Assembly (NCBI RefSeq): GCF_006345805.1
Contig: NW_021836070.1
Coordinates: 1-24,231 of the forward strand
Direction of reading: 5' to 3'
DNA length: 24,231 nucleotides
Origin: Octopus sinensis
Taxonomy: Eukaryota
In this document: positions 2,371 to 22,821 of the stretch, piece after piece
Layout: the number at the start of each line of letters is the position of its first letter
Position numbering within the stretch: the first letter of the stretch is position 1
Notes under the pieces: model-generated
What the model saw: the letters and a program-made list of their open reading frames with translations, nothing else
Databases searched by the model: none
Told to the model about the DNA's origin: nothing
Program-made: the position numbers and the translations under genes

Positions 2371-2698
2371 GTAGCCAGCCAGTAGGTGTCGCTTCCGACA
2401 ATCTCTGTTCGATGGTTTTATTTACCTAGTTTCGGTGGAATACATCCACTTGTTTTCAATAATAGAAATATTAAAATAACTAAGTCTCTCTAAAAGAGAA
2501 CAGCGGCAGCGTTCCCGGAATGCCATATTAGTATGGCGATAACTATTATTTTCGGAACGCTGCCGCTGTTCTCTTTTAGAGAGACTTAGTTATTTTAATA
2601 TTTCTATTATTGAAAACAAGTGGATGTATTCCACCGAAACTAGGTAAATAAAACCATCGAACAGAGATTGTCGGAAGCGACACCTACTGGCTGGCTAC

Positions 2699-5599: not shown

Positions 5600-5653
5600 T
5601 GTGGTGTGTGGTGAAGGAGTGTGACGGATGGGGGAGAGCGGAAGTGGGGCTTG
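5600..5653 (+). repeat. 5' LTR remnant of A1 (54 bp)
   Basis: Identical to the first 54 nt of the LTR at 22552; fused directly to mid-gag sequence. Confidence 0.9.
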
Positions 5654-5738
5654 GGGAGAATGAGATGGACTGGGCAACAGGTGGACGTGTTTGCCAATGA
5701 GCTTAGAAGACTGGCTAAATTGGCGGGTTATGAGGGAG
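5651..5738 (+). pseudogene. gag: A1 gag fragment (LGRMRWTGQQVDVFANELRRLAKLAGYEG)
   Basis: Homologous to 19175-19262 and to B gag (LGAIRWTGGQVDDFASEARRLATLAG); continues at 9994 after the B insertion. Confidence 0.85.
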
Positions 5739-6034
5739 TGTAGTGAGTGTGTGCGATTTGAATATAGAGGCACCTACCTTCTCTTCGTGGTGACGGAGAT
5801 CCTCCCGAGATGGCTGGTCCTTCCTCACAGCCCCTACCCGAACACTAACGATAGCAGCTGCTAGCCCCAAACCCTTTAGCGACTTCCTCGCACGTCTTGT
5901 CACCAGCACAACCCACGTTGGAAAGGTCAACTTCCGCCCCCTGCGCGCGCTTGACGGCTGACCCCTTCCGCTTGCCCCAGCTTCCGGTCAACGCACCCCG
6001 CTGGCTGACGTCCTGCTGCTGACGTCATCCCACA
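5739..6034 (-). repeat. 3' LTR of element B (296 bp)
   Basis: Matches 9670-9993 except in an internal short tandem-repeat block. Confidence 0.95.
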
Positions 6035-6043
6035 CGCCACCCT
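6035..6043 (-). promoter_or_regulatory. Polypurine tract of B (AGGGTGGCG abutting the LTR TG)
   Basis: Position immediately upstream of the 3' LTR. Family A equivalents: AGGGAGGCG (17217-17225) and AGGGGGGCG (22543-22551). Confidence 0.65.
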
Positions 6044-6047
6044 GATC

Positions 6048-7571
6048 TTAAAGATCACAATCTCTCCGCTCCATGTTGTAGTCTACCATCCAACCGGGAG
6101 AACGCCTTGCTCGTCGAGATCTTCTCAAGCTGGGCTCCTCACTCTCCCCCTCTCCCGAATCATCGTCCGTCGAAGCAACAATCCTGCGAAGGTCCAAGAC
6201 ATGTCGAGGTGTGCCATCTACGGATACGTTGCTTCTGGAATTGATCGCCGTCACCGTTCCTCTGCTCCATTGAGACGTACAGCGCGCCTTTGGTGGCTTG
6301 ACCCAGACTTCCTCCCCTATTTTCACGCGAACGGGTCCCTTCTCTTCCTCGTGACCCTCTGGCGCTTTGCTCGGGTGCCTCCATTCATATTTGAACACAG
6401 CTCTCTGCGGCACAGATTCCTCAGCCTGTCCGGATCGGGGAGACAAGTTGTACCAAAAAACTGCTTCAAGCGGCGAAATGTGCCCTCTTTCCGCTATGGC
6501 CTTGACTGTCCGATGGTACCTCTCCACGATCCCGTTACCGCCCGGCCTATACGCTGCTCTGAACAAGCGTCGCACGTTCCACCGATCAAGCATAACCCTC
6601 AATGCTTCCGAACGAAACGCCGCCCCGTTGTCCATCAGTAGTTCTTCCACGGGACCTCTCTCTAAAAATATCCCGTTCAGGATCTGCACGATCTCGTCAG
6701 CAATGCCCGATCTCAACTCCCTCCAAATGGCCAGCCGGCCCGGCCCACAGTCGACCATGGAGAGGTACATTCGCTGACGGTAGTGTGTCACATCCACAGC
6801 TAGCCTTTTCCAGTTCTGCTCCACGGAAAGGCTTCCCTGTTCATGCCCACACGGAGCAGGGTCGATGGACTGACACCTGTCGCAGCTCCCGACCACCTTC
6901 CGGACGCTTCTCCTGGTCACGTCAGCATCAATCTTTTTTGCCAGATACAGGGTCCTGTCCACACCCAGGTGATGCATAGCGTGCAGTTTCTTCAGTTCAG
7001 AGTCATCCAACCGACACGCCGCAGCTATCCCTTTCCGGGCCTCCTCCGGTTCTTCCAACCACGCCCTTTTCATCCTGGTCAGTACGTCCGCCTTGTTTTT
7101 CTCCGAAGGCACGAAGACCACGTTCAGCTTCAGTCCGAATTCGGCGATCAATTCACCTAGAACTCCTAGACGGCGCTTCACTAACATCTCCGCAGCACCT
7201 TTCGTCCGCACTCTCCTGTCACCGGTGATCACCGATCCTACCCAGCCAAGTACAGTGGCCGAATCCGTCCGCATTTCAATCGTGCGCAGCCCCCATTTCA
7301 AGGTCAAGTTCACCCCTTTCAGCAGCGCGTCTAATTCGGCGACATTGATGTGGTTGAAATCATCTGCTTTCCGAAGCCAGGCCGCGTCCTCCACCGCAGT
7401 GCCTTCGATTGCCAACACCACCCCTATCGCTATACTGCTAGCATCACACCAGACGGTCCCGCATTTCGTCTTGGGCACGTACCAGTTCCCCCTGACCGGG
7501 TCTTCCGCTCTTGTCCTCTCTAGAATCTCCTGCATCATCGCCACCGTCCCTTCTCCCCCTTGTCGCCCCAC
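6048..7571 (-). CDS. pol: B pol, RNase H and integrase portion
   Basis: WCDASS, INVAELDA, RTDSATV, NKADVLTR (RNase H); HAMHHLG..CDRC (HHCC); LAVD, LLMDNGAAF, GIVERYHRTVK (DDE); C-terminal RRSRRARRSPGWMVDY. Confidence 0.92.
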   Translation of the reverse strand: MGRQGGEGTVAMMQEILERTRAEDPVRGNWYVPKTKCGTVWCDASSIAIGVVLAIEGTAVEDAAWLRKADDFNHINVAELDALLKGVNLTLKWGLRTIEMRTDSATVLGWVGSVITGDRRVRTKGAAEMLVKRRLGVLGELIAEFGLKLNVVFVPSEKNKADVLTRMKRAWLEEPEEARKGIAAACRLDDSELKKLHAMHHLGVDRTLYLAKKIDADVTRRSVRKVVGSCDRCQSIDPAPCGHEQGSLSVEQNWKRLAVDVTHYRQRMYLSMVDCGPGRLAIWRELRSGIADEIVQILNGIFLERGPVEELLMDNGAAFRSEALRVMLDRWNVRRLFRAAYRPGGNGIVERYHRTVKAIAERGHISPLEAVFWYNLSPRSGQAEESVPQRAVFKYEWRHPSKAPEGHEEEKGPVRVKIGEEVWVKPPKARCTSQWSRGTVTAINSRSNVSVDGTPRHVLDLRRIVASTDDDSGEGESEEPSLRRSRRARRSPGWMVDYNMERRDCDL

Positions 7572-8248
7572 CTCTCTCCTTCTGCTCGTCTCTTGGTGTA
7601 ACTACACGCCGTGCGCAGCCATCCAGCGATCGGGTAGTGACCGACCAACTTCCCACACACCGAGAACAGCTCTCTCCTGCTGACGCTGGAACTCAGCTCT
7701 GGGATTTCATTTCCTCTCCGGAACACCAATTCACCTGATCTATCTCTTCGCAGCTTCAGCCCCAGCGCGGCTCCCCCTTCAATCGACTCCGGTGGCTTAG
7801 CAACCAGTCCGAACTTCTCCAGATGTCTCACTACCTCGTCGGCTGGCACTACAGTTTCGTCCACCAAAATGTCGTCAATGTAGGAGCTGGTGGCCTTCCT
7901 AATCTTGCCGTCTTTCCCTAGGACGGACCTAAGCACTGCCGCCATGATCTTCGGAGCGGAATTCAGCCCGAAACCCAGCCTGGTTAGACAGTACGTCCGG
8001 CCCTTGTACCGCACCAGCTGATATCGCCATAGTTTGTCGCTCACATGGAGCTGCAAGTATGCCGATCTCAAGTCGACAATCGTCGCTGCCTCAGTCGACT
8101 GTCTCCACTTACGTAATGCCTCACCACAAACGTCTGTCGCCTCACCTCCCGTGTGACACGATATGTGCTGGTTTAGCTCCCTGAAGTCCAGCACCGGTCT
8201 GACTTTTCCCTTCGTAGGCTGCACCACCGCCATCAGGTAGCACTCCAC
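7535..8248 (-). CDS. pol: B pol, reverse transcriptase portion (frame breaks near 8240 and 7560)
   Basis: VRPVLDFRELN, IVDLRSAYLQL, LGFGLNSAP, SYIDDILV. Confidence 0.92.
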   Translation of the reverse strand: MECYLMAVVQPTKGKVRPVLDFRELNQHISCHTGGEATDVCGEALRKWRQSTEAATIVDLRSAYLQLHVSDKLWRYQLVRYKGRTYCLTRLGFGLNSAPKIMAAVLRSVLGKDGKIRKATSSYIDDILVDETVVPADEVVRHLEKFGLVAKPPESIEGGAALGLKLRRDRSGELVFRRGNEIPELSSSVSRRELFSVCGKLVGHYPIAGWLRTACSYTKRRAEGERWGDKGEKGRWR

Positions 8249-8914
8249 CCGCTACCTCCTCCTTCCAAGGGACAAGGACCCCTTCCTCGATCCACCTCTC
8301 CACCTCGTCTTCAAACCCAACCCTGGCTTGGCCTTTCAGGGTATGCTGGTAACAGCTCACCCTGTTCTCCAGTGTCGGGGGCTCGTCCTTCCATTTCCAC
8401 TCTATCGTCCACCGCTGACCATCGAACGCCGTCTGGAAGTCTTTGTCCTCGATGGTGTAAGCGGCGCAGTCCCTCGTGGGGCTCTGCTCCCTCTGGCGAT
8501 CCTGACTCGCAGTGCACGACGCCCCCACGCTTCCGAACGTGACCTCATTTCCCACAACACTGACGCCACCGAGGCAGTTGATGGCGTCCATCCCCATCAC
8601 CACATCAACTCCATTTATCACGCGTTCGGCCACAATTGCCTGTAGCCTTAGCGTCGCGCCGCGCACCACTATCTCTACCTTGCTGCTGCCTCTGCAACGG
8701 ATTTCGCTGCCGTCGACCGCCCGGACACTACACACCCCGTTCCATTCCTTCGTCACCCTCGAAGTCACCAGGGTGGTCGTACAGCCCGTATCCACAAGGG
8801 CCTTGAACGTCTCCCCCTCGGCCTCCACATCAATTAATGGCAGCGTCTCCAATAGCGCCTCTACTCGTTTGAGGGGAAAGTTCGAGAGGCAGCAACTTCC
8901 CGCGGTCGTTTCCC
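8142..8914 (-). CDS. pol: B pol, aspartic protease and N-terminal RT portion
   Basis: LPLIDV..KALVDTGCTTTLV..VDVVMGMDAI; begins at the GGGAAAC slippery site. Confidence 0.9.
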
Positions 8915-9624
8915 TGGCCGCAATCACGGGCAATGTGCCCTGTCTGCCTGCATCGATAGCAAACGGGCCCCGGCTGCGTACAGTCCCGCGCCATATGCGG
9001 TCCCTGGCATCTAAAACACCGTCCTGAGAACGGCCGCTCTCGTTGCACGGTGGGCTTCTGTACCTCTTTCTCGGGACGTCGTCCGTCTTTACGCGCCTCC
9101 GTCACCGCCATCGCTATCGCCTTCCGCCCAGAGTGTCTCGTCAACGCGCGAGCATGAGTTACAAGTTCGCTCAATGGCATCTTATTGACCCCGGGCAGTT
9201 GTTGTAGGTGAATCCCTACATCGTCGGGGAACCCATTCACGAACGCCAGTCGGGCTGCTCTCTCCAGTTCTTCTCCGGCAAACCCGGCCAGAGTCGCTAG
9301 CCTTCTAGCTTCCGATGCAAAATCATCCACCTGGCCTCCCGTCCACCTGATTGCACCTAGCTTAGCGAAAGCTGTGTACTCGCATTCCGTGTATGCGTCA
9401 CACAAGCGCCGCTCTATATTCTCATCGCCGAGCCGTTCTTCGACATCCATCTCTAGGTAAAGCGACAACGCACTCCCTTCCAAATACAGCGCCATAAGAT
9501 TCGCCACGTCGCTTATGCCCTGCAGTCTCGCCACCAGCCTGATTTTCTGAATCCAGTCCACTACATCGCCTTCACCGTTAAAAGGTCTGACGACGTCACT
9601 GGCGATCCTAATTTTTGCAGACAT
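8861..9624 (-). CDS. gag: B gag with two CCHC zinc knuckles (true stop inferred at 8861-8863 after restoring one base)
   Basis: CFRCQGPHMARDC and CYRCRQTGHIARDC. Comparison with family A (GGGAAACGGACCGCGGGA) shows B lacks one G just after the slippery site. Confidence 0.88.
8874..8914 (-). promoter_or_regulatory. -1 ribosomal frameshift signal of B: G GGA AAC plus downstream stem-loop
   Basis: Heptamer 8914-8908 in gag frame; hairpin GGGAAGTT/AACTTTCCC at 8901-8874. Confidence 0.75.
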
Positions 9625-9657
9625 CGTGTTGAAAAAAAATGTGAATGTTTACGAACT

Positions 9658-9669
9658 GCCGAAATAGCT
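9658..9669 (-). promoter_or_regulatory. Primer-binding site of B, AGCTATTTCGGC, complementary to tRNA-Phe(GAA) nt 1-12
   Basis: Abuts the 5' LTR CA; the plus strand reads GCCGAAATAGCT, the conserved metazoan tRNA-Phe 5' end. Identical in family A (18859-18870). Confidence 0.8.
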
Positions 9670-9993
9670 TGTAGTGAGTGTGTGCGATTTGAATATAGAG
9701 GCACCTACCTTCTCTTCGTGGTGACGGAGATCCTCCCGAGATGGCTGGTCCTTCCTCACAGCCCCTACCCGAACACTAACGATAGCAGCTGCTAGCCCCA
9801 AACCCTTTAGCGACTTCCTCGCACGTCTTGTCACGTCTTGTCACCTCGCACGTCTTGTCACCTCGCACAACCCACGTTGGAAAGGTCAACTTCCGCCCCC
9901 TGCGCGCGCTTGACGGCTGACCCCTTCCGCTTGCCCCAGCTTCCGGTCAACGCACCCCGCTGGCTGACGTCCTGCTGCTGACGTCATCCCACA
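9670..9993 (-). repeat. 5' LTR of element B (324 bp)
   Basis: Matches 5739-6034 plus 28 bp extra in the CACGTCTTGT repeat block. Confidence 0.95.
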
Positions 9994-10404
9994 GGAGAGT
10001 CGCTAGAACGGACGATTAGGTTAGCGTTCGTGACCGGCTTTCCCGACATCATGTCGGTCAAGCTACAGAAGCTCCCGAACGTGCGTTCGATGCCGATGGC
10101 CGATATCATGTCGCGGGCACGTGTACTGGTTTCGTGCAGCAGGTTGACGTCGGTAGCAGCGACTGTAACGTCGAAAAGTGGCCCAGCTAGGAGCAGCGGA
10201 GAGGGGCTGAGGAAAGAACGTGTGCGACTGTTCATAGGACAGTGTTTCCGGTGCCAAGGTCCACACATGGTCCGTGACTGCGCGTCGCCCAAGCCTGAGG
10301 TGATTTGCTACCGGTGTCGAGAGCCAGGGCATGTAGCCAGCGAGTGTCTGCAGGGAAACGGACCGCGGGAGACTACTGCGCCGGTAGTCGTCCCTTTGGA
10401 TTAG
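9994..10404 (+). pseudogene. gag: A1 gag C-terminal half with two CCHC knuckles
   Basis: CFRCQGPHMVRDC and CYRCREPGHVASEC; stop at 10402-10404. Confidence 0.9.
10353..10394 (+). promoter_or_regulatory. -1 frameshift signal of A1: G GGA AAC, 7-nt spacer, stem-loop GGGAGACTAC/GTAGTC(G)TCCC
   Basis: The -1 frame from the heptamer (GKRTAGDYCAG...) reads into the protease (LPVVDI..ALVDTGCTTT). Confidence 0.8.
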
Positions 10405-10515
10405 TAGCAGCGCGTTTATCATCGCTACCTGTGGTCGACATTCTGGTGAAGGGGAAGATGTCGCGAGCCCTGGTGGACACGGGCTGTACAACGACCCTGA
10501 TGACTACGGAAGTGG

Positions 10516-11458
10516 CATCCACCAGAATGTCGTCGATGTATGAATTGGTGGCCCTTTTACTCTGTCCACCTTCCCCAGGATGGCCTTGAGAATTGTTGCC
10601 ATAATCTTCGGCGCCGAATTCAGCTCGAATTCCAACCTGGTCAGACAGTACGTCAGGCCCCTATACCTGACGAGCTGGTACTTCCATAATTTCTCAGCCA
10701 CATGCACCTGTAGGTATGCCGAGTTCAAATCGATAATCGTGGAGGCCCCCGTCGTCTGCCTCCACTCTCGCAAGGTGCCTCCGCAGACATCCGTGGCCTC
10801 GCCGCTTGTATGACACGAAACGTGGTCATTCAGCTCTCGGAATTCGAGCACTGGCATGACCTTACGCTTTGTGGGCTGTATCACCGCCATCAGTGGCAGG
10901 ACTCCGCTCTCTTCTTTTTCCCAAGGGATCAGTATGCCCTCCTTAATCCACCGCTCCACTTCCCCCTCGAACTCACTTCTGGCATCTCCTTTTAGAGTAT
11001 GCTGATAGCAGCCCATTTTATTCTATAACATCGGGGGCTCTCCCTTCCAGTGCCACTCCACTGTCCACCTCTTGCCATCAAAGACAGCCCGAAAATCCTG
11101 GTCTTCAATGGTGTGCGCCGCATCCTTTTCCTCACGGTTGTCGTCGGTACACGGTCTCGCCCTACACGGCTTCCCCGCTAACCCAAACGTTACGCCAGCC
11201 CCGTTGACGGTGACACCTCCCAAGCGGGTGATTGCATCCATCCCCATCACCACGTCAATCTCGTCCACCAAGTGACCAACTACAATTGCACGCAACGTCA
11301 GCTGTAGTCCCTGCACCACAATCTGCGCATCCGTACCCCTTCGCAGTACACTTCTCTTCCGTCGACTGCCCTAACACTGCTTCCTCCACCACTCCACGTG
11401 CACTTCGCAGTGCACTTCTCTTCCGTCGACTGACCTAACACTGCTTCCTCCACTCCAC
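10516..11458 (-). pseudogene. pol: Inverted copy of the A1 PR-RT segment (left arm of palindrome 1), including a 61-bp tandem duplication
   Basis: Minus-strand ORFs 11023-11319 and 10504-11016 encode PR/RT; reverse complement of ~11459-12338. Confidence 0.9.
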
Positions 11459-13479
11459 GTGGAGTGGGGAAGCAGTGTTAGGGCAGTCGACGGAAGAGAA
11501 GAACACTGCGAAGGGGTTACGGATGCGCAGATTGTGGTGGCAGGGACTACAGCTGATGTTGCGAGCGATTGTGGTTGGTCACTTGGTGGACGAGATCGCG
11601 TGGTGATGGGGATGGATGCAATCACCGTTTGGGAGGTGTCACCGTCAACGAGACTGGCGTAACGTTTGGGTTAGCGGGGAAGCCGTGTAGGGCGAGACCA
11701 CGCACCGACGACAACCGTGAGGAAAAGGATGCGGCGCAAACCATTGAAGACCAGGATTTTCGGGCTGTCTTTGATGGCGAGAGGTGGACAGTGGAGTGGC
11801 ACTGGAAGGGAGAGCCCCCCTATGTTAAAGAATAAAGTGGGCTGCTATCAGCATACTCTAAAAGGGGATGCCAGAATTGAGTTCGAGGGGGAGGTGGAGC
11901 GGTGGATTAAGGAGGGCATACTGATCCCCTGGGAAAAAGAAGAGAGCGGAGTCCTGCCACTGAAGGCGGTGATACAGCCCGCAAAGCATAAGGTCAGGCC
12001 AGCGCTCGACTTCCGAGAGCTGAATGACCACGTTTCGTGTCATACAGGCGGCGAGGCCACGGATGTCTGCGGAGACACATTGCGAGAGTGGAGGCAGACG
12101 GCGGGGGCCTCCACGATTGTCGATTTAAAGTCGGCATACCTTCAGGTGCATGTGACTGAGATACTATATACGTACCAGCTCGTCAGGTATAGGGACCGGA
12201 GGTACTGTCTGACCAGGTTGGGATTCGGGCTGAATTCAGCGCCGAAGATTATGGCAACAATTCTCAAGGCCATCCTGGGGAAGGTGGACAGAGTAAAAAG
12301 GGCCACCAATTCATACATCGACGACATTCTGGTGGATGAAACTGTGATACCAGCAACGGAGGTCATAGGCCATCTGAAGAGTTTTGGACTGATCGCCAAG
12401 CCGCCAGAGGCTATGGAGGGAGGTGCAGCACTGGGCCTCAAGCTATGGAGATACAAGGCCGGCGCCTTGGTGTTCCGGCGAGGGAATGAGGTCCCTGAAC
12501 TGGGCGCCAGCATGAGTAGACGGCAACTGTTCTCTGTGTGTGGGAAGCTGGTGGGACACTACCCGATTGCAGGCTGGCTCCGGACAGCATGTAGCTTCAT
12601 CAAGAGACGAGCCGAAGGAGTGAAGTGGAATGACGAAGTGGGGGAGAGGACAATCGAAATGATGCAGGAAGTCTTGGTCAGAGTAGGAGCAGAAGACCCA
12701 GTGAGGGGCAACTGGTATGTTCCCCAATCAAAGAGCGGTATCGTATGGTGTGACGCCAGTTGCATCGCAATAGGGTTGTCTTGGAAGTAGGAGGTGTCAC
12801 GTGGAAGATGCGGCCTGGCTCAGGAAGATGGATGACTGCAATCATATCAAGGTGGCGGAGTTGGATGCCGTGCTGAAGGGGGTGAACCTAGCCTTGAAGT
12901 GGGGGTTGCAACACCAAAGAAATCAGGACTGATTCGGCCACTGTAATTGTTGGGCGACAGCAGTCATCACCGATGAGCGGAGGGTGCGGACCAAAGGGGC
13001 TGCAGAGATGCTGGTAAAGCGTCGATTAGGATAACTGCTGCTTGAACTAACCACTGAGTTCAATCTGAAGCTGAGCGTGATCTTTGTGCCTTCCAAGAAG
13101 AACAGGGCAGACGTCCTGACCAGGGTAAAGCGAGCCTGGTTGCAGGTGCCAGAGGATACGAAGCAGGATGTAGCTGCAGTATGCCGTCTGAGCGACTCGG
13201 AGTTACGGAGACTGCACACCATGCACCACATGGGTGTGGACAGGACATTGTTCCTGGCCAGAAAATTGTGTCCGACGTAACAAGACAGAGTGTGCAGAGA
13301 GTGGTTAGCAGTTGTGACAGGTGCCAGTCCATCGACCCTGCTCCGGTCGTGCATGAAGCGGGAAGTATTCCAGTGGACCAGGACTGGAGACGACTGGCGG
13401 TGGACATAACACACTACCGGCAGGGGACACACCTCTCAATGGTTGACTGCGGACCGATGCGGTTCGCCATATGGAGGGA
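11459..13479 (+). pseudogene. pol: A1 pol, forward PR-RT-RH-partial IN, with frameshifts
   Basis: ORF 11717-12790 (NSYIDDILV, WCDAS); IN HHCC and LAVD near 13220-13410; breaks off at RFAIWR. Confidence 0.9.
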
Positions 13480-13480
13480 C

Positions 13481-14464
13481 ATGGTGGACACGGGCTGTAC
13501 AACGACCGTGATGACTACGGAAGTGGCATCCACCAGAATGTCGTCGATGTATGAATTGGTGGCCCTTTTTACTCTGTCCACCTTCCCCAGGATGGCCTTG
13601 AGAATTGTTGCCTTAATCTTCGGCGCTGAATTCAGCCCGAATCCCAACCTGGTCTGACAGTACGTCGGGCCCCTATATCTGACGAGCTGGTACTTCCATA
13701 ATTTCTCAGCCACATGCACCTGTTGGTATGCCGACTTCAAATCGACAATCGTGGAGGCCCCCGTCGTCTGCATCCACTCTCGCAAAGTGTCTCCGCAGAC
13801 ATCCGTGGCCTCGCAGCCTCTATGATACTACACGTGGTCATTCAGCTCTCGGAAGTCAAGCACTGGCCTGACCTTATGCTTTATGGGCTGTATCACCACC
13901 ATCAGTGGCAGGACTCCGCTCTCTTCTTTTTCCCAGGGGATCAGTATGCCCTCCTTAATCCACCGCTCCACTTCCCCCTCGAACTCACTTCTGGCATCTC
14001 TTTTAGAGTATGCTGATAGCAGCCCACTTTATTCTTTATCATCGGGGGCTCTCCCTTCCAGTGCCACTCCACTGTCCACCTCTTGCCATCAAAGACGGCC
14101 CGAAAATCCTGGTCTTCAATGGTGTGCGCCGCATCCTTTTCCTCACGGTTGTCGTCGGTGCACGATCTCGCCTACACGGTTTCCCCGCTCACCCAAACAT
14201 TACGCCAGCCTCGTCGACGGTGACACCTCCCAAGCGGGTGATTGCATCCATCCCCATCACCACGTCAATCTCGTCCACCAAGTGACCAACCACAATTGCT
14301 CGCAACGTCAGCTGTAGTCCCTGCACCACAATCTGCGAATCCGTAACCCCTTCGCAGTGCACTTCTCCTCCGTCGACTGCCCTAACGCTGCTTCCTCCAC
14401 TCCACGTGCACTTCGCAGTGCACTTTCTTCCGTCGACTGACCTAACACTGCTTCCTCCACTCCA
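13481..14464 (-). pseudogene. pol: Repeat of the PR start and inverted PR-RT arm (palindrome 2, left arm)
   Basis: Same junction GTGGCATCCAC|CAGAATG as at 10516 (here 13527-13533); same 61-bp duplication. Confidence 0.88.
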
Positions 14465-17225
14465 GTGGAGGGAGGAGAAGCAGTGTTAGGGCAGTCGACG
14501 GAAGAGAAGTGCACTGCGAAGGGGTTACGGATGCGCAGATTGTGGTGCAGGGACTACAGCTGACGTTGCGAGCAATTGTGGTTGGTCACTTGGTGGACGA
14601 GAATGACGTGGTGATGGGGATGGATGCAATCACCCGGTTGGGAGGTGTCACCGTCAACGAGACTGGCGTAACGTTTGTGTTAGCCGGGAAACCGTGTAGG
14701 GCGAGACCACGCACCGACGACAAACGTGAGGAAAATGATGCGGCGCACACCATTGAAGACCAGGATTTTCGGGCTGTCTTTGATGTCAAGAGGTGGACAG
14801 TGGAGTGGCACTGGAAGGGAGAGCCCCCGATGTTAAAGAATAAAGTGGGCTGCTATCAGCATACTCTAAAAGGAGATGCCAGAAGTGAGTTCGAGGGGGA
14901 GGTGGAGCGGTGGATTAAGGAGGGCATACTGATCCCTTGGGAAAAAGAAGAGAGCGGAGTCCTGCCACTGACGGCGGTGATACAGCCCACAAAGCATAAG
15001 GTCAGGCCAGTGCTTGACTTCCGAGAGCTGAATGACCACGTGTCGTGTCATACAGGCGGTGAGGCCACGGATGTCTGCGGAGACACCTTGCGAGAGTGGA
15101 GGCAGACGACGGGGGGCTCCACGATTGTCGATTTGAAGTCGACATACCAACAGGTGCATGTGGATGAGAAATTATGGAAGCTACCGCTCTCAGTATAGGG
15201 GACGGACGTACTGTCTGACCAGGTTGGGATTCGGGCTGAATTCAGCGCCGAAGATTATGGCAACATTCTCAAGGCCATCCTGGGGAAGGTGAACAAGTAA
15301 AAAGGGCCACCAATTCATACATCGACGACATTCTGGGGATGAACCGTGATACCAGCAACGGAGGTCATAGGCCACCTGAAGAGTTTTGGACTGATCGCCA
15401 AGCCGCCAGAGTCTATGGAGGGAGGTGCTGCACTGAGCCTCAAGCAATGGAGAGACAAGGCCGGCGCCTTGGTGTTCCGGCGAGGGAATGAGGTCCCTGA
15501 ACTGGGCGCCAGCATGAGTAGACGGGAACTGTTCTCTGTGTGTGGGAAGCTGATGGGACACTACCCGATTGCAGGCTGACTCCGGACAGCATGTAGCTTC
15601 ATCAAGAGACGAGCCGAAGGAGTGAAGTGGAATGATAAAGTGGGGGAGAGGACAATCGACATGATGCAGGAAGTCTTTGTCAGAGTAGGAGCAGAGGACC
15701 CAGTGAGGGGCAACTGGTATGTTCCCAAATCAAAGAGCGGTATCGTATGGTGTGACGCCAGTTGCATCGCAATAGGGTTGTCTTGGAAGTGGGAGGTGTC
15801 ACGGTGGAAGATGCGGCCTGGCTAAGGAAGATGGATGACTGCAATCATATCAACGTGGCGGAGTTGGATGCCGTGCTGAAGGGGGTGATCCTCGCCTTGA
15901 ATTGGGAGTTGTACACCATAGAAATCAGGACTGATTCGGCCACTGTATTTTGTTGGGCGACAGCAGTCATCACCGATGAGCGGAGGGTGCGGACCAAAGG
16001 GGCTGCAGAGATGCTGGTAAAGGGTCGATTAGGAATACTGCGTGAACTAACCACTGAGTTCAATCTGAAGCTGAGCGTGATCTTTGGTGCCTTCCGAGAA
16101 GAACAGGGCAGACTTCCTGACCAGGGTAAAGCGAGCCTGGTTAAGTGGCCAGAGGATGCGGAGCAGGATGTAGCTGCAGTATGCCGTCTGAGCGACTCGG
16201 AGTTACGGAGACTGCACACCATGCATCACATGGGTGTGGACAGGACATTGTTCCTGGCCAGAAAAGTTGACTCCGACGTAACAAGAGAGAGTGTGCAGAG
16301 AGTGGTTAGCAGTTGTGACAGGTGCCAGTCCATCGACCCTGCTCCGGTCGTGCATGAAGCGGGAAGTATTCCAGTGGACCAGGACTGGAGACGATTGGCG
16401 GTGGACATAACACACTACCGGCAGGGGACATACCTCTAAATGGTTGACTGCGGACGGGTCGGATGAAGGAGAATAAGTCGGGGACCGCAGAAGAAATTGT
16501 GAATGTGTTGAATGAGATATTCCTGGAACGGGTCCCGTGGATGAACTGCTTCTGGACAACGGCACTGCATTTCGCTCGGATGTGCTGAGAGAAATGCTTG
16601 ATGAGTGGAAGGTCAACCGCTTCTTCAGGGCGGCATACCGGCCAAGTGGAAACGGGGTGGTGGAAAGGCATCATCGTACCATCAAGGCCATCGCAGAGAG
16701 GGGTCACATTTCACCAGTCGAGGCCGTGTTTTGGTACAATATGTCGCCCAGATCAGGACAGGCTGAGGAGTCGGTGCCACACAGGGCAATATTCAGGTAC
16801 GAGTGGAGGCATCCCTGTACTACATCAATGCGACCCGGGGCAGAGGAAGAGCACGCCTTCGTGCAGGTCGGGGAGGAAGTCTGGGTAAAACACCCAAACG
16901 CACGGTGTAGATCGCAATGGGGAAAGGGGACAATAACCTCCGTAAATTCAAAGAATAACATCTCGGTCGATGGTATGCCACGCCACGTTTTGGACATACG
17001 GAGGATTGTCCATGCCCCAGAGGATGGGGCCAGCAGCAGTGGGCAAGACGAAAACTCAGACAGGATGACGAGGTCGGCAGCAACACTCCAAGAACAAGCC
17101 CTAGGGTCGCACTGCGATCACAGAGGGAGCGGCACCCTCCTCCCTGGTTGGCTGATTATGAAACCAGTTTCAGGTGCGAGAGTGAGTGAGGAAGCCGGTT
17201 CAGTGATCTGTAGATCAGGGAGGCG
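14465..17225 (+). pseudogene. pol: A1 pol, forward PR-RT-RH-IN to the PPT, with multiple frameshifts and stops
   Basis: ORFs 14509-15198, 15762-16439 and 16537-17241 carry PR/RT, RH/HHCC and IN core motifs (LLLDNGTAF, GVVERHHRTIK). Confidence 0.9.
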
Positions 17226-17487
17226 TGTGGTGTGGTGGTGAAGGAGTGTGACGGATGGGGCAGAGCGGAAGTGAGGCTTGCAGGGCTTGCAGGGCGCATG
17301 CGCCGGAGGAAGCGGAAGTGACAGGCAGGACGCACGTGCGGCATTGAGGAGTTGCGGCAGACAGGACGAAGGGACCAGACGAGAGAGAGTTGCTAAAAGC
17401 GATCCAAGTTCATCTCCGACGAGGTAAGACCCAATTACATTTCCATTCTCCCTTTTCTGTTGTACTCTTTTCAACGTTCACACTACA
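17226..17487 (+). repeat. 3' LTR of A1 (262 bp)
   Basis: TG...CTACA; preceded by the PPT and followed by CACAC. Confidence 0.93.
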
Positions 17488-17573
17488 CACACACATCCCC
17501 CGGTCTGAGATTCGAACCCGCGAATTCTCGACCGCGAGTCCGCTGTTCTAACCACTAGGTTATGTGCCTCCAC
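17488..17573 (-). mobile_element. tRNA-like head of the SINE split by A1
   Basis: Minus strand: A-box-like TAACCTAGTGGTTAG and B-box GGTTCGAATCT. Confidence 0.75.
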
Positions 17574-17635
17574 TATTCCGCTTATACTTACCACTATTGT
17601 TGCAATCATAAGAACACATAAAACATTGGTTGCAA

Positions 17636-18110
17636 ATGTGTGTGTGCGTGTGTGTGTGTGAGTGTGTATGTGTGTGTGTGTGTGTTTCTTGTGAGTGTGT
17701 ATGCGTGCGTGTGTGTTTGTGTTTGATGTGTGTGCGTGAGTGTGTATGTTTGTTGTGAGTGTGTGTATGTGTGCGTGAGAGTGTGTATGTTTGTTGTGAG
17801 TGTTTGTGTTTGTGTTTGATGTGTGCGCGTGAGTGTGTATGTCTGTTGTGAGTGTGTGTATGTGTGCGTGAGTACGTGTATGTTTGTTGTGAGTGTGTAA
17901 GTGTGCGTGTGTGTTGTTGATGTGTGTGCGTGAGTGTGTATGTTTGTTGTTAGGTGTGTATGTTTGTTGTGAGTGTATATGTGTGCGTGTGTGTTTGTCT
18001 TTGTGCTTGATGTGGTGTGTGTGTGTGTGTGCGTGAGTGTATGTGTGTTTGTTGTGAGTGTGTAGTGTGATGTGTGCGTGTGTATGTGTGCTTGTGTGTG
18101 TGTAGATGTG
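17636..18110. repeat. GT-rich compound microsatellite/minisatellite (units like GTGTGCGTGAGTGTGTATGTTTGTTGTGAGT)
   Basis: Directly visible; duplicated at 22971-23435. Confidence 0.9.
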
Positions 18111-18309
18111 TGTATCTATTGGTCTCCTTCAGTCATTCTCTATCTCTCTTCTGTCTTCATCATCCCGCCAGACACGCATTTTGAGTCAATCTACGAACGT
18201 GTGTTTGATTGCTGTGTGTGTCAGGTGTGTGTGTGTGTATGCATGCGCGCTCGCAGGCGCGTTTTTTTTTGCGTCTGCTTCTGTGCATGTGCGTAGACTA
18301 CCAGATGAT

Positions 18310-18537
18310 GTGCGTGGCAGAAACGTTATCACGCCGCCGCGCGAAATGCATATCCGTATTTCGTCTGCCGTTACGTTCTGAGTTTAAATTCCACCGAGGT
18401 CGACTTTGCCTTTCATCCTTTCGGGGTCGATAAATTAAGTACCAGTTACGCACTGGGGTCGATATAATCGACTTAATCCGTGTGTCTGTCCTTGTTTGTC
18501 CCCTCTGTGTTTAGCCCCTTATGGCTAGTAAAGAAAT
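18310..18537 (+). mobile_element. SINE-like repeat
   Basis: GGCAGAAACGTTA..GCGAAATGC..TTCTGAGTTTAAATTCCACCGAGGTCGACTTTGCCTTTCATCCTTTCGGGGTCGATAAATTAAGTACC..AGTAAAGAAAT. Recalled as a high-copy octopus SINE; truncated duplicate at 23633-23775. Confidence 0.65.
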
Positions 18538-18579
18538 GCATATATGTATTATGTAAGCACGTATGTATATGCTTGTATA

Positions 18580-18858
18580 TGTGGTGTGATGGTGAAGGAG
18601 TGTGACGGAATGGGGGGGGGAGCAGAAGTCTGGCTTGCATGTCCTGCAGGGCGCATGCGCGGGCGGAAGCGGAAGTGACAGACAACGCACGTGCGGCATT
18701 GACCAGTTGCGCCAGACACGATGAAGACACCGAGAAGACACGACGCGAGCGAGTTGGCTAAAGGCGATCCGAGTTCATCTCCGGCCAGGTAAGACCCAAT
18801 TACATTTCCATTCACATTTCATTCCTTTCCTTGTTCTGTTGTACTCTTTCATACTACA
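18580..18858 (+). repeat. 5' LTR of A2 (279 bp; diverged family A subtype)
   Basis: TGTGGTGTGATGG...CTACA; homologous to but clearly different from 17226-17487 and 22552-22821. Confidence 0.9.
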
Positions 18859-18870
18859 AGCTATTTCGGC
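18859..18870 (+). promoter_or_regulatory. Primer-binding site of family A, AGCTATTTCGGC
   Basis: Abuts the LTR CA; identical to the B PBS; complement of tRNA-Phe nt 1-12. Confidence 0.8.
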
Positions 18871-18925
18871 AAATAATCACTCGGTTTCGTAAAAAATAAA
18901 AATAGAAAATTATGCATGCAGTGCT

Positions 18926-19675
18926 ATGGTTTCACGCGAGCCTATAACACCGTTTTGCGGCGACACCGATGTGGTCGCTTGGTTGAAGAGGGTAAGTTGG
19001 GGCGAAGCTCCACGGTATAGCTGACCTGGCTAGTTTTATGCCGTTGTATTTGGATGGCCCGGCCTTGGCGTTATATTTAGAGATGGAGGAGACGGACCAA
19101 CTCAGCGCAGATAAAGTGGAGATCCGACTTATGGAGGCCTTCGCGGAAGGAATGTTTGAAGCGTACGGTCTCGGCTGGGTAGAATGAGATGGACCGGACA
19201 ACAGGTGGACGTGTTCGCCGGTGAGCTTAGAAGGTTGGCTAAACTGGCGGTATATGAGGGAGAGTCGCTAGAACGGACGGTTAGGTTAGCGTTCGTGACC
19301 CGGCTTTCCCGACATCATGTCGGTCGAGCTACAGAAGCTTCCGAAAATGCGTTCGATGCCGATGGTCGATATCATATCGCGGGCACGTGTACTGGTTTCG
19401 TGCATCAGGTTGACGTCGGTAGCAGCGACTGTAACGTCGAAAAGTGGCCCAGCTAGGAGCAACGGAGAGGGGCTGAGGAAAGAACGAACGGTGCGATCGT
19501 TCAAAGGACAGTGTTTCCGGTGCCAAGGCCCACACATGGTCCGCGACTGCGCGTCGCCAAGCTTGAGGTGATTTGCTACCGGTGTGTCGAGAGCCAGGGC
19601 ATGTAGCCAGCAAGTGTCTGCGGGGAAACGGACCGCGGGAGACTACTGCGCCGGGTTAGTTGTCCTTTGGATTAG
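18926..19675 (+). pseudogene. gag: A2 gag, frameshifted
   Basis: MVSREPITPFCGDTDVVAWLKRV..LASFMPLYLDGPALALYLEM..CFRCQGPHMVRDC aligns with B gag; slippery GGGAAAC at 19623-19629. Confidence 0.85.
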
Positions 19676-22515
19676 TAGCGGCGCGTTTATCATCGTTCCC
19701 TGTGGTCGACATTCTGGTGAAGGGGAAGATGTCGCGAGCCCTGGTGGACACGGGCTGTACGACGACCCTGATGACCACAGATGTGGGAGACGTGGAGTGG
19801 AGGAAGCAGTGTTAGGGCAGTGACGGAGAGAAGTTCACTGCGAAGGGGATACGGATGCGCAGATTGTGGTGCAGGGACTAGAGCTGACGTTGCGAGCGAT
19901 TGTGGTTGGTCACTTGGTGGACGAGATCGACGTGGTGATGGGGATGGATGCAATCACCCGTTTGGGAGGTGTCACCGTCAACGAGGCTGGCGTAACGTTT
20001 GGGTTAGCGGGGAAACCGTGTAGGGCGAGACCACGCACCGACGACAACCGTGAGGAAAATGATGCGGCGCACACCATTGAAGACCAGGATTTTCGGACTG
20101 TCTTTGATGGCGAGAGGTGGACAGTGGAGTGGCACTTGAAGGGAGAGCCCCCGATGTTAAAGAATAAAGTGGGCTGCTATCAGCATACTCTAAAAGGAGA
20201 TGCCAGAATTGAGTTCGAAGGGGAGGTGGAGCGGTGGATTAAGGAGGGCATACTGATCCCTTGGGAAAAAGAAGAGAGCGGAGTCCTGCCACTGTTGGCG
20301 GTGATACAGCCCACAAAGCATAAGGTCAGGCCAGTGCTCTACTTCCCGAGAGCTGAATGACCACGTGTCGTGTCATACAGGCGGCGAGGCCACGGATGTC
20401 TGCGAAGACACCTTGCGAGAGTGGAGGCAGACGACGGGGGCCTCCCGATTGTCGATTTGAAGTCGGCATACCAACAGGTGCATGTGGCTGAGAACTATGG
20501 AAGTACCAGCTCGTCAGGTATAGGGGCCGGACGTACTGTACTGTCTGACCAGGTTGGGATTCGGGCTGAATTCAGCGCCGAAGATTATGGCAACAATTCT
20601 CAAGGCCATCCTGGGGAGGTGGACAGAATAAAAAGGGCCACCAATCATACATCGACGACATTCTGGTGGATGAAACCGTGATACCAGCAACGGAGGTCAT
20701 AGGCCACCTGAAGAGTTTTGGACTGATCGCCAAGCCGCCAGAGGCTATGGAGGGAGGTGCTGCACTGGGCCTCAAGCTATGGAGAGACAAGGCCGGCTCC
20801 TTGGTGTTCCGCGAGGGAATGAGGTCCCTGAACTGGGCCCAGCATGAGTAGAAGGCAACTGTTCTCTGTGTGTGGGAAGCTGGTGGGACACTACCCGATT
20901 GCAGGCTAGCTCCGACAGCATGCTAGCTTCATCAAGACGAGCCGAAGGAGTGAAGTGAATGATGAAGTGGGGGAGAGGACAATCGAAATGATGCAGGAAG
21001 TCTTGGCCAGAGTAGGAGCAGAAGACCCGTGAGGGGCAACTGGTATGTTCCCCAATCAAAGAGCGGTATCGTATGGTGTGACGCCAGTAGCATCGCAATA
21101 GGTTGTCTTGGAAGTGGGAGGTGTCACGTGGAAGATGCGGCCTGGCTCAGGAAGATGGATGACTGCAATCATATCAACGTGGCGGAGTTGGATGCCGTGC
21201 TGAAGGGGTGAACCTAGCCTTGAAGTGGGGTTTGCACACCATAGAAATCAGGACTGATTCGGCCACTGTACTTGGTTGGGCGACAGCGTCATCACCGATG
21301 AGTGGAGGGTGCGGACCAAAGGGGCTGCAGAGATGCTGGTAAAGCGTCGATTAGGAATACTGCGTGAACTAACCACTGAGTTCAATCTGAAGCTGAGCGT
21401 GATCTTTGTGCCTTCCGAGAAGAACAGGGCAGACGTCCTGACCAGGGTAAAGCGAGCCTGGTTGCCGGTGCCAGAGGATGCGAAGCAGGCTGTAGCTGCT
21501 GTATGCCGTCTGAGCGACTCGGAGTTACGGATACTACACACCATGCATCACATGGGTGTGGACAGGACATTGTTCCTGGCCAGAAAAGTTGACTCCGACG
21601 TAACAAGACAGAGCGTGCAGAGAGTGGTTAGGAGTTGTGACAGGTGCCAGTCCATCGACCCTGCTCCGGTCGTGCATGAAGCGGGAAGTATTCCAGTGGA
21701 CCAGGACTGGAGACGACTGGCGGTGGACATAACACACTACCGGCAGGGGACATACCTCTCAATGATTGACTGCAGACCGGGGCGGGTGAAGGGAGATGAA
21801 GTCGGGGACCGCAGAAGAAATTGTGAAAGTGTTGAATGAGATATTCCTGGAACGAGGCCCCGTGGATGAACTGCTTCTGGACAACGGCACTGCATTTCGC
21901 TCGGATGTGCTGAGAGAAATGCTTGATGAGTGGAAGGTCAACCGCTTCTTCAGGGCGGCATACCGGCCAAGTGGAAACGGGGTGGTGGAAAGGCATCATC
22001 GTACCATCAAGGCCATGGCAGAGAGGGGTCACATTTCACCAGTCGAGGCCGTGTTTTGGTACAATATGTCGCCCAGATCAGGACAGGCTGAGGAGTCGGT
22101 CCCACACAGGGCAATATCCAGGTACGAGTGGAGGCATCCCTGTACTACATCAATGCGACCCGGGGCAGAGGAAGAGCACACCTTCGTGCAGGTCGGGGAG
22201 GAAGTCTGGGTAAAACACCCAAACGCACGGTGTAGATCGCAATGGGGAAAGGTGACAATAACCTCCGTAAATTCAAAGAATAACATCTCGGTCGATGGTA
22301 TGCCACGCCACGTTTTGGACATACGGAGGATTGTCCATGCCCCAGAGGATGGGGCCAGCAGCAGTGGGCAAGACGAAAACAACAGACAGGATGACGCTGT
22401 CGGCAGCAACACGCCAAGAACAAGCCCTAGGGTCGCACTGCGATCACAGAGGGAGCGGCACCCTCCTCCCTGGTTGGCTGATTATGACACCAGTTTCAGG
22501 TGCGGGAGTGAGTGA
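19623..22515 (+). pseudogene. pol: pol (PR-RT-RH-IN) of the chimeric A copy, many frameshifts, no internal inversion
   Basis: ORF pieces 19866-20360, 20666-20851, 21276-21839 and 21796-22515 (ending RSQRERHPPPWLADY). Confidence 0.9.
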
Positions 22516-22551: not shown

Positions 22552-22821
22552 TGTGGTGTGTGGTGAAGGAGTGTGACGGATGGGGGAGAGCGGAAGTGGG
22601 GCTTGCAGGGCTTGCAGGGCTTGCAGGGCGCATGCGCCGGAGGAAGCGGAAGTGACAGGCAGAACGCACGTGCAGCATTGAGGAGTTGCGGAAGACAGGA
22701 CGAAGGGACCAGACGAGCGAGTTGGCTAAAAGCGATCCAAGTTCATCTCCGACGAGGTAAGACCCAATTACATTTCCATTCTCCCTTTTTCTGTTGTACT
22801 CTTTTCACCGTTCACACTACA
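22552..22821 (+). repeat. A1-type 3' LTR, second copy (270 bp)
   Basis: Near-identical to 17226-17487, with one extra GGCTTGCAG unit; followed by CACAC. Confidence 0.93.

What the first reader, a model, noticed from the sequence alone, without database searches (positions are those of the whole stretch)
9657..9670. Non-canonical PBS complementary to the 5' end of tRNA-Phe
Seen: directly after the 5' LTR CA, element B reads AGCTATTTCGGC(A), with no TGG. Established: LTR PBSs normally start with TGG to pair with the tRNA 3' CCA; metazoan tRNA-Phe(GAA) begins GCCGAAAUAGCUCAG, so the PBS is a 12/12 complement of nt 1-12. Known exceptions are copia/Ty5 (tRNA-iMet fragment cut in the anticodon arm) and Tf1/sushi (self-priming by the first ~11 nt of the element's own RNA after RNase H cleavage). 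I find no GCCGAAATAGCT inside either LTR, arguing against self-priming. Inference: priming by a 12-nt 5' tRNA-Phe fragment, possibly produced by the element's own RNase H after the PBS invades the acceptor stem, i.e. a trans version of Tf1 priming. I know of no described case; a literature search is needed.
Basis: partly seen in the sequence, partly recalled or inferred. Interest (0 to 1): 0.9.

Follow-up and report, generated by a model that had tools for sequence, protein, structure and literature searches.

The report
Retrotransposon primer site matching tRNA 5' end
A widespread family of very small retrovirus-like jumping genes in octopus, sea slug, barnacle, Hydra and other animals carries, where the primer for DNA copying should bind, a 12-letter site that pairs with the first 12 letters of a transfer RNA rather than with its tail, which points to a way of starting reverse transcription that I could not find described.

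Summary
Element B lies on the minus strand (5' LTR 9993..9670, 3' LTR 6034..5739). Its LTR ends ...ACTACA and is followed at once by AGCTATTTCGGC (9669..9658), with no TGG.

This 12-mer is the exact complement of nt 1-12 of human tRNA-Phe(GAA), whose sequence I took from a paper rather than from memory.

It is not a quirk of one dead copy:
- A second element in the window, about 72% identical in pol and with an unalignable LTR, has the same 12-mer at the same place (18859-18870).
- So do relatives in Octopus sinensis, Argonauta, Aplysia, Amphibalanus and Hydra (identical LTRs, open gag and pol), and many metagenome contigs.
- Among 41 distinct sites there are 11 variants. They differ almost only at positions pairing with tRNA nt 4-7.
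- Two variants are 12/12 complements of human tRNA-Lys(UUU) and tRNA-Lys(CUU) 5' ends.
- Position 13 is free.
- No element holds a complement of its own site, so Tf1-type self-priming is out.
- A canonical TGG site is absent.

Best reading: a 12-nt 5'-terminal tRNA fragment ending at U12 primes minus-strand synthesis. Which nuclease cuts is only inferred; the element's RNase H is my favoured candidate. I found no prior description, but the literature I could search is incomplete.

The parts
9670..9993 (-). Element B, 5' LTR (TGTGGG...ACTACA)
   Evidence: 91% identical to 5739-6034; ends read; outer boundary confirmed by the empty-site comparison.
9658..9669 (-). Element B, 12-nt primer binding site AGCTATTTCGGC, the complement of tRNA-Phe(GAA) nt 1-12
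   Evidence: tRNA sequence from PMC11706605. Family-wide conservation.
8830..9624 (-). Element B gag (264 aa, one open frame, CCHC zinc knuckles). Its ATG lies 33 nt after the 12-mer.
6048..8933 (-). Element B pol (protease, RT, DUF7047/connection, RNase H, integrase). Broken: two frame breaks, no large deletion.
   Evidence: Pfam hits. Three similarity pieces in two frames against the single 946-aa Hydra pol.
6035..6058 (-). Element B hairpin TGATC-loop-GATCA, with the pol stop codon in the loop, followed by a G-rich polypurine tract that abuts the 3' LTR
   Evidence: The same arrangement is present in relatives whatever their PBS type.
5739..6034 (-). Element B, 3' LTR
9994..9997 (.). Target-site duplication of B (GGAG on the plus strand); second copy at 5735-5738
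   Evidence: 4-bp overlap of the two flanks on the paralogous sequence.
5735..5738 (.). Target-site duplication of B, second copy
18580..18858 (+). A-type element (copy A2), 5' LTR (TGTGGTG...ATACTACA). Only about 81% identical to the 3' LTR and without a matching duplication, so this copy is rearranged.
18859..18870 (+). A-type element, the same 12-nt primer binding site AGCTATTTCGGC directly after the LTR
22552..22821 (+). A-type element (copy A2), 3' LTR, preceded by hairpin plus polypurine tract at 22530-22551

Best explanation
The 12-mer is the minus-strand primer binding site of a family of compact (about 4.0-4.6 kb) gag-pol LTR retrotransposons.

Step 1 (shown by comparison): the site pairs with nucleotides 1-12 of a host tRNA, that is the 5' strand of the acceptor stem, U8, A9 and the first three bases of the D stem. 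The tRNA is tRNA-Phe(GAA) for the octopus elements and most animal relatives.

Step 2 (follows from LTR-element logic): the base next to U5 must pair with the 3'-terminal base of the primer. The primer therefore ends at U12 and has to be made by a cut between tRNA nt 12 and 13. Plus-strand strong-stop DNA then copies the primer until it runs off at tRNA nt 1. That run-off fixes the site at 12 nt and leaves position 13 free.

Step 3 (inferred): the cut is made by the element's own RNase H on the site:tRNA RNA duplex, as the Tf1 enzyme does on its self-primer. This would make it a Tf1-like mechanism acting in trans on a tRNA.

The two copies in the window are dead fossils. The mechanism is read from the family as a whole.
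For: Position:
- The 12-mer directly follows the LTR end in B and in the diverged A-type element.
- It does the same in Hydra, Aplysia, Oratosquilla, Argonauta, Amphibalanus and Octopus sinensis copies whose LTR ends are fixed by LTR pairs and 5-bp duplications.
- 34 of 35 distinct gag starts with upstream sequence have the motif within 70 nt. The 35th (L020) has it further upstream.
- The gag ATG follows 0-43 nt later, so there is no room for another site.
- Only 2 of 41 elements have any TGG in that interval.

Match to tRNAs:
- Phe type, 16 sites, is 12/12 to human tRNA-Phe(GAA).
- AGCTATCCGGGC is 12/12 to human tRNA-Lys3.
- AGCTAGCCGGGC is 12/12 to human tRNA-Lys(CUU).
- The 16-mer GCCGYGATAGCTCAGT, which covers the two next commonest variants, starts a called tRNA in 24 of 34 viral-contig loci.
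- The Oratosquilla variant, shared by three elements, starts 11 called tRNAs, all Phe(GAA).

Shape of conservation:
- Variation sits at site positions 6-9, which pair with tRNA nt 4-7. In the fuzzy search, which was not tied to a fixed motif, the post-LTR hits likewise differ only at these positions.
- Position 13 is A 22, C 10, T 5, G 4.

Other points:
- No cis primer: no element has a complement of its own 12-mer at up to 1 mismatch, and counts lie below the shuffled control.
- The family is alive: the Hydra copy has 100% identical LTRs and open gag and pol.
- An RNase H domain is present (Pfam RVT_3/RNase_H). The Hydra pol model aligns over about 670 columns with HIV-1 RT p66 and foamy virus PR-RT.
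- Precedent for RNase H cutting an RNA duplex to make a primer: Levin 1996, cited in PMC4600332.
Against: - No host tRNA was read, so the match rests on human tRNA sequences and on phage or bacterial tRNAs for the variants.
- Several variants (GCCGCGAUAGCU, GCCGUGAUAGCU and others) are not tied to any eukaryotic tRNA.
- No primer, cDNA or small-RNA data were examined, so a 12-nt fragment has not been seen.
- Nothing in the sequences says which nuclease cuts.
- Outside nt 1-12 there is no extra complementarity to tRNA-Phe that might position an enzyme.
- Part of the column conservation is imposed by the pattern I used to collect sites (positions 1-5 and 10-12).
- A 12-bp duplex requires unwinding both the acceptor and D stems.
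Confidence: 0.7

Rival explanations
1. Same pairing, different nuclease. The primer is a ready-made host 5' tRNA fragment, or a tRNA cut by a host nuclease. It is packaged and annealed, and the element's RNase H plays no part in making it.
For: Everything that supports pairing with tRNA nt 1-12 fits this equally well. Short 5' tRNA fragments are known cell products according to reviews met. No sequence feature ties the cut to RNase H.
Against: From my own knowledge, the described 5' fragments are 14 nt or longer and many nucleases leave ends that cannot prime. An exact end at U12 inside the D stem is not a known host cleavage site. Tf1 gives a direct precedent for the element-encoded route.
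Confidence: 0.2
2. Tf1/sushi-type self-priming. The site pairs with the first bases of the element's own transcript, which folds back and is cut.
For: There is no TGG. The site length (12 nt) is close to the Tf1 site length (about 11 nt, from my own knowledge). Self-priming is reported from fungi to vertebrates (PMC4600332).
Against: No complement of the 12-mer lies in either LTR or anywhere else in the window at up to 2 mismatches. In 41 elements there is none at up to 1 mismatch, and counts fall below the shuffled control. The site is identical in elements whose LTRs cannot be aligned. Variants equal tRNA 5' ends.
Confidence: 0.03
3. The 12-mer is not a primer site. It would be another conserved signal at the start of the RNA, such as a packaging or translation signal or a mimic of the tRNA 3' acceptor strand (its last 8 bases equal tRNA-Phe nt 66-73), and priming happens elsewhere or by another route.
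For: TTTCGGCA in B, A and Hydra is identical to the 3' acceptor strand plus discriminator base of tRNA-Phe. The site sits only 0-43 nt before the gag ATG.
Against: The identity to the 3' strand is a necessary consequence of complementarity to the 5' strand. The discriminator position (13) is not conserved. The block starts exactly at the LTR end and includes tRNA nt 8-12, which have no counterpart in the 3' strand. No other candidate site exists between the LTR and gag. An LTR element needs a primer site at exactly this place.
Confidence: 0.04
4. Chance resemblance, or pairing with the 3' end of some non-tRNA RNA.
For: None beyond the fact that the host RNA pool was not examined.
Against: Shuffles give 0 expected exact matches in the window. 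There are three independent 12/12 matches anchored at nt 1 of three tRNAs. The invariant UAGCU and GCC blocks with a variable acceptor-stem core are the pattern of tRNA 5' ends.
Confidence: 0.02

Closest known systems
Tf1 / Tf2 / Tj1 / sushi-group self-priming (Levin 1995, 1996, cited in PMC4600332)
   Same: There is no TGG. The site is short, about 11-12 nt, and pairs with the very 5'-terminal bases of an RNA. The primer must be released by an endonucleolytic cut at the end of an RNA:RNA duplex. Plus-strand strong stop can run off at the RNA 5' end.
   Different: In Tf1 the partner is the element's own transcript, in cis. Here no such complement exists and the partner is a host tRNA, in trans. 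Pol is not of the chromovirus type: there was no chromodomain hit, and the RNase H is of the RVT_3/RNase_H kind.
Half-tRNA priming of copia, 1731, Ty5, Tca2 and fungal Copia FunCo1. The site is complementary to an internal tRNA region (PMC5445492 for FunCo1; the others from my own knowledge).
   Same: A 5'-derived tRNA fragment primes rather than the CCA end, and the tRNA must be cleaved.
   Different: Those sites pair with the anticodon-arm region of a fragment of about 39 nt, mostly from initiator tRNA-Met. Here the pairing covers nt 1-12 up to the 5' terminus, the cut would lie in the D stem, and the tRNAs are Phe or Lys types. The elements are not Copia.
Canonical retroviral / Ty3 / BEL-Pao primer site (18 nt, TGG..., complementary to the tRNA 3' end)
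   Same: The position directly after U5 is the same, the partner is a host tRNA, and the tRNA used differs between lineages.
   Different: The opposite end of the tRNA is used. The site is 12 nt, not 18. There is no CCA pairing: TGG is present in 2 of 41 elements. The stop of plus-strand strong-stop synthesis would be the RNA end, not a modified base.
Retrovirus-like lineages with RT-connection-RNase H pol (Retroviridae, lokiretroviruses, Odin retrotransposons; PMC9040795)
   Same: Gene order is gag, PR-RT-connection-RNase H-IN, without env as in Odin. The integrase profile hits betaretroviral, lentiviral and foamy integrases best. The pol model aligns along HIV-1 p66 and foamy PR-RT.
   Different: The elements are much smaller, about 4 kb. 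Their host range is far wider than that reported for Odin, which is eight sea anemones. No phylogeny was made, so the relationship is open. The Odin paper says nothing on primer sites.

Membership tests
LTR retrotransposon (gag-pol, integrase-bearing) | Two direct LTRs with TG...CA ends, flanked by a short target duplication | tested here: met
   B has LTRs 9993..9670 and 6034..5739, 91% identical, TGTGGG...ACTACA, with a 4-bp duplication and an empty-site match. Relatives have 5-bp duplications.
LTR retrotransposon (gag-pol, integrase-bearing) | gag with zinc knuckle; pol with protease, RT, RNase H and DDE integrase; polypurine tract before the 3' LTR | tested here: met
   Pfam zf-CCHC, gag-asp_proteas, RVT_1, RVT_3, Integrase_H2C2 and rve. 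G-run before the 3' LTR.
Canonical tRNA 3'-end primed elements | Site starting TGG, complementary to the 3' CCA end of a tRNA | tested here: not met
   There is no TGG after the LTR in B or A. TGG lies between the LTR and the gag ATG in only 2 of 41 elements. The canonical tRNA-Phe site is absent from the window.
Tf1/sushi self-primed elements | Site complementary to the first bases of the element's own transcript, inside the 5' LTR | tested here: not met
   No complement in the window at up to 2 mismatches. None at up to 1 mismatch in 41 elements, which is below the shuffled control.
Tf1/sushi self-primed elements | Primer released by the RNase H domain cutting an RNA duplex | not testable with these tools
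   This is a biochemical property. Only the presence of an RNase H domain is shown.
Half-tRNA (copia/Ty5-type) primed elements | Site complementary to an internal (anticodon-arm) region of a tRNA | tested here: not met
   The complementarity is to nt 1-12 and ends at the tRNA 5' terminus. There is no further match to nt 13-76.
BEL/Pao | Pao-type protease/RT signature (Pfam Peptidase_A17, DUF1758/1759) | tested here: not met
   None of these families was hit by the four B proteins or listed for 120 homologues.
Dual-RNase-H retrovirus-like lineages (Retroviridae, loki, Odin) | RT followed by a connection/tether domain and a separate RNase H | tested here: met
   DUF7047 lies between RVT_1 and RVT_3/RNase_H. 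The model aligns over about 670 columns with HIV-1 p66 and foamy PR-RT.
Dual-RNase-H retrovirus-like lineages (Retroviridae, loki, Odin) | Phylogenetic placement with those lineages on RT, RNase H and IN trees | not tested
   No reference sequences were available to the tools. Only profile and fold rankings were obtained.
tRNA 5'-end primed elements (the class proposed here) | A host tRNA whose nt 1-12 complement the local site | tested here: inconclusive
   Met against human tRNA-Phe, tRNA-Lys3 and tRNA-Lys(CUU) and against phage and bacterial tRNAs. The hosts' own tRNAs could not be read.

The most novel reading that the evidence does not exclude
A whole, still active lineage of retrovirus-like elements, spread across cnidarians, molluscs, crustaceans and uncultured eukaryotes, starts reverse transcription from the first 12 nucleotides of a host tRNA. 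The element's own RNase H cuts this fragment out after the genomic RNA invades the acceptor and D stems. That would be a third way of using tRNA as primer. It would also be a mechanistic bridge between tRNA priming and Tf1 self-priming, with primer switching among tRNAs that share the GCC....UAGCU 5' end.
Probability: 0.4. Interest if true: 0.85.

Novelty: new variant of a known kind. Interest (0 to 1): 0.75.

Why it matters
Primer choice is one of the few fixed points of retroelement replication. Textbooks list three options:
- the tRNA 3' end
- an internal cut in initiator tRNA
- self-priming

A lineage that uses the tRNA 5' terminus would add a fourth. It would have several consequences:
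- It would show that the Tf1 trick of cutting an RNA duplex to free an 11-12-nt primer can act on a cellular RNA.
- It would explain why standard annotation tools, which look for TGG and tRNA 3' ends, report these elements as lacking a primer site.
- Host small RNAs from tRNA 3' ends target canonical primer sites (reviewed in PMC7472051). These elements would escape that control, while 5' tRNA fragments would become relevant to them.
- The strict 12-mer is a handy signature for finding the family in genomes and metagenomes.

Tried and rejected
- **Self-priming.** I searched for the complement of each element's own 12-mer and found none.
- **Bipartite tRNA binding as in Ty1/Ty3.** I looked for extra complementarity to tRNA-Phe nt 13-76 within 150 nt either side of the site. 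It was no greater in Phe-type than in other-type elements.
- **Pairing of the conserved hairpin before the polypurine tract with the AGAUCU of the tRNA-Phe anticodon arm.** Rejected, because the hairpin is the same in elements with other site types.
- **A canonical tRNA-Phe site elsewhere.** Absent.
- **tRNA genes in the window or in host loci that could give the host tRNA-Phe.** None in the window. Only a tRNA-Val turned up, next to one Oratosquilla element.
- **The tRNA-like stretch after the A-type 3' LTR.** It is not a callable tRNA.
- **Relatives in IMG/VR.** None.
- **Odin retrotransposons as the family.** Their paper gives no primer-site data and reports a much narrower host range.
- **BEL/Pao.** No signature domains.
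- **Literature.** Ten searches, using words and also tRNA 5'-end 15-mers as search strings, found no description of such a site. The original Tf1 papers are not held.
- **Look-ups that failed.** Two protein look-ups returned nothing.

Full report
**1. What is in the window**

A self-comparison shows direct repeats 5739-6034 and 9670-9993, 91% identical. Between them on the minus strand lie a gag frame with CCHC knuckles and pol pieces with protease, RT, DUF7047, RNase H (RVT_3) and integrase domains. Read on the minus strand, both repeats run TGTGGGATGACG...CACTCACTACA.

The element is flanked by CTCC on both sides. Its two flanks also match a paralogous uninterrupted sequence at 19173-19262 and 19259-19665 with a 4-bp overlap. 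Element B is therefore a clean insertion, into the gag of another element, and its LTR ends are known to the base.

The 5' LTR ends at 9670. The next bases are AGCTATTTCGGC (9669..9658), then A, then 32 more bases to the gag ATG. There is no TGG.

B is a fossil. Its LTRs are 9% diverged. Its pol matches the single 946-aa Hydra pol in three pieces, which means two frame breaks. Its gag is open.

**2. More than chance**

The exact 12-mer occurs twice in the window, and no dinucleotide shuffle produced even one match.

The second copy (18859-18870, plus strand) directly follows the LTR end ...CATACTACA of a different element, the A type. That element's pol is only about 72% identical to B at the DNA level, and its LTR does not align with B's.

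**3. The tRNA**

I did not rely on memory. PMC11706605 prints human tRNA-Phe(GAA) behind a T7 promoter, and PMC10505166 gives a forward primer for it. Nucleotides 1-12 are GCCGAAATAGCT, the exact reverse complement of the site.

The last eight bases of the site plus the following A equal the tRNA's 3' acceptor strand and discriminator. That is simply the other face of the same complementarity.

**4. The family**

The RNase H-integrase frame of B finds hundreds of relatives. The closest are in Octopus sinensis (80-90% identity), so the window is probably from an octopus. Others are in Argonauta, Aplysia, Oratosquilla, Petrolisthes, Portunus, Penaeus, Trinorchestia, Amphibalanus, Nymphon and Hydra. 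Many are on metagenome contigs of about 4 kb.

I fetched DNA for eleven genomic places and 80 metagenome loci.

Where two LTRs are present, the sequence after the 5' LTR is:

| Host (locus) | LTR end, 12-mer | Notes |
|---|---|---|
| Hydra | ...TATTACA, AGCTATTTCGGC | LTRs 100% identical, element 3967 bp, gag 254 aa and pol 946 aa open |
| Aplysia | ...ACTACA, AGCTATTTCGGC | |
| Amphibalanus | ...GCTACA, AGCTATTTCGGC | |
| Argonauta | ...TCAAG, AGCTATTTCGGC | LTRs 100% identical |
| Octopus sinensis | ...ACCACA, AGCTATTTCGGC | |
| Oratosquilla, three elements | ...ATCACA, AGCTATCTAGGC | variant 12-mer |

Target duplications are 5 bp in these relatives.

**5. All sites together**

I collected 41 distinct sites. 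There are eleven 12-mers:
- the Phe type, 16 sites
- AGCTATCGCGGC, 9
- AGCTATCACGGC, 6
- AGCTACCTCGGC, 2
- AGCTATCCGGGC, 2
- six types seen once each

The gag ATG follows 0-43 nt later, and in half of the elements within 4 nt.

In a count not tied to the motif, 34 of 35 distinct gag starts with upstream sequence have it within 70 nt. The remaining one, L020, has it further up, separated by a tRNA-like insert.

Differences between types sit at site positions 6-9, which pair with tRNA nt 4-7. Position 13 is A 22, C 10, T 5, G 4.

One caveat applies. Positions 1-5 and 10-12 were partly fixed by the pattern used to collect the sites. The fuzzy search, which only required 9 of 12 matches to the Phe type, shows the same picture.

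**6. Variants are tRNA 5' ends too**

- AGCTATCCGGGC is the 12/12 complement of human tRNA-Lys3 (PMC8715211).
- AGCTAGCCGGGC is the 12/12 complement of human tRNA-Lys(CUU) (PMC12140204).
- For the two next commonest types, the 16-mer GCCGYGATAGCTCAGT is the start of an ARAGORN-called tRNA in 24 of 34 IMG/VR loci. These are mostly Thr, with four Phe.
- For the Oratosquilla type, the 15-mer starts 11 called tRNAs, all Phe(GAA).

Those last two sets are phage or bacterial tRNAs. They show only that such 5' ends exist, not which host tRNA is used.

**7. What it is not**

- **Self-priming.** No complement lies in the window at up to 2 mismatches. In 41 elements there is none at up to 1 mismatch, and the counts at 2 and 3 mismatches are below those for shuffled 12-mers.
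- **Canonical priming.** TGG lies between the LTR and gag in only 2 of 41 elements, and the canonical tRNA-Phe site is absent from the window.
- **Bipartite binding.** There is no extra complementarity to tRNA-Phe nt 13-76.

**8. How it most likely works**

In every LTR element the U5/site boundary marks the first base added to the primer. The primer's last base therefore pairs with the first base of the site, which makes it U12.

The other end of the conserved block coincides with tRNA nt 1. That is what one expects if plus-strand strong-stop DNA copies the primer and runs off its 5' end. It explains the length of 12 and the free position 13.

From my own knowledge of tRNA-Phe modifications, nt 1-12 carry no base that blocks reverse transcriptase.

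A tRNA must therefore be cut between nt 12 and 13, leaving a 3'-OH. The one documented enzyme that makes such a primer is the RNase H of Tf1 (Levin 1996, cited in PMC4600332). From my own knowledge, it cuts an RNA duplex formed by the site and the first 11 bases of an RNA.

The elements here encode an RNase H of the RNase HI/retroviral kind behind a connection domain. The Hydra pol model (mean pLDDT 72) aligns over about 670 columns with HIV-1 p66 and foamy virus PR-RT.

I put the pairing at about 0.85, the 12-nt fragment as primer at about 0.75, and the element's RNase H as the cutter at about 0.4. A host-made fragment is the main rival.

**9. What kind of element**

It is not BEL/Pao, since none of the signature families was hit. 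It is not Tf1-like either, with no chromodomain hit and a different RNase H.

Profile searches rank betaretroviral, lentiviral, deltaretroviral and foamy integrases first, and among RTs foamy and HIV-2. The architecture gag / PR-RT-connection-RNase H-IN without env recalls the Odin retrotransposons (PMC9040795). Those are reported from eight sea anemones only, and I made no tree.

**10. Novelty**

Ten searches of the held literature found no element with a site complementary to a tRNA 5' terminus.

Papers that review non-canonical cases list internal tRNA regions, Tf1 self-priming, a hairpin site and a polypyrimidine site (PMC5445492, PMC5006619).

The library lacks most subscription-journal papers, so an older description cannot be excluded.

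I rate this a new variant of a known kind (tRNA-fragment priming), of high interest to retroelement specialists. It is easy to test with existing host genomes and sequencing data.

Noticed in passing
window 6035-6058 (-), 17204-17225 (+), 22530-22551 (+); L001 about 6626-6648 and other loci: A conserved hairpin TGATC-loop-GATCA holds the pol stop codon in its loop. It is followed at once by a G-run polypurine tract and the 3' LTR. It is present whatever the primer-site type, so it may help define the plus-strand primer.
   Followed up: partly
window 5600-5738 and 9994-10515: Element B is nested in the gag of an A-type element. That host copy has itself lost the stretch between the start of its LTR and gag, including its own primer site.
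   Followed up: partly
window 17487-17570 and 22822-22905: A tRNA-like remnant, with a T-arm-like GGTTCGAATC on the minus strand, lies directly after the A-type 3' LTRs. It is not called as a tRNA by ARAGORN or Rfam and may be a tRNA-derived SINE.
   Followed up: partly
L003 2095-2167 (-): A tRNA-Val(CAC) gene lies about 200 bp upstream of one Oratosquilla element. The other host loci scanned showed no tRNA gene, so there is no sign of general tRNA-gene targeting.
   Followed up: partly
L020 1833-1950: One metagenome element has a tRNA-like stretch ending in a T-run inserted between the 12-mer and the gag ATG.
   Followed up: no
position 13 of the 41 sites (window 9657 and 18871): The base after the 12-mer is A in 22 of 41 elements. 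This mild bias might reflect a non-templated A added when plus-strand strong-stop DNA runs off the primer end, which is speculation.
   Followed up: no
window 9994-24231: The right half of the window is a patchwork of A-type sequence. It has direct repeats spaced about 3.0 kb and 5.3 kb apart at 93-96% identity, an inverted duplication of about 880 bp (10516-11389 against 11457-12338), and long impure (TG)n arrays (17635-18108, 22965-23440).
   Followed up: no
L007, L015, L017, L024, L025, L027, L033, L042, L057, L060 and others: Many metagenome contigs of 3.8-4.7 kb have identical ends. They are circularly permuted assemblies of one LTR plus the body, which suggests high copy number or circular or tandem forms in the samples.
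   Followed up: no
L119 2625-7031: The Argonauta element has 100% identical LTRs and a TCAGT duplication, but its LTRs end ...TCAAG instead of the usual ...ACA. The 12-mer still follows at once.
   Followed up: partly
window 2414-2655: A long near-perfect palindrome scores below threshold against a plant microRNA family on both strands. It is most likely a hairpin-forming repeat (MITE-like) and not a microRNA.
   Followed up: no
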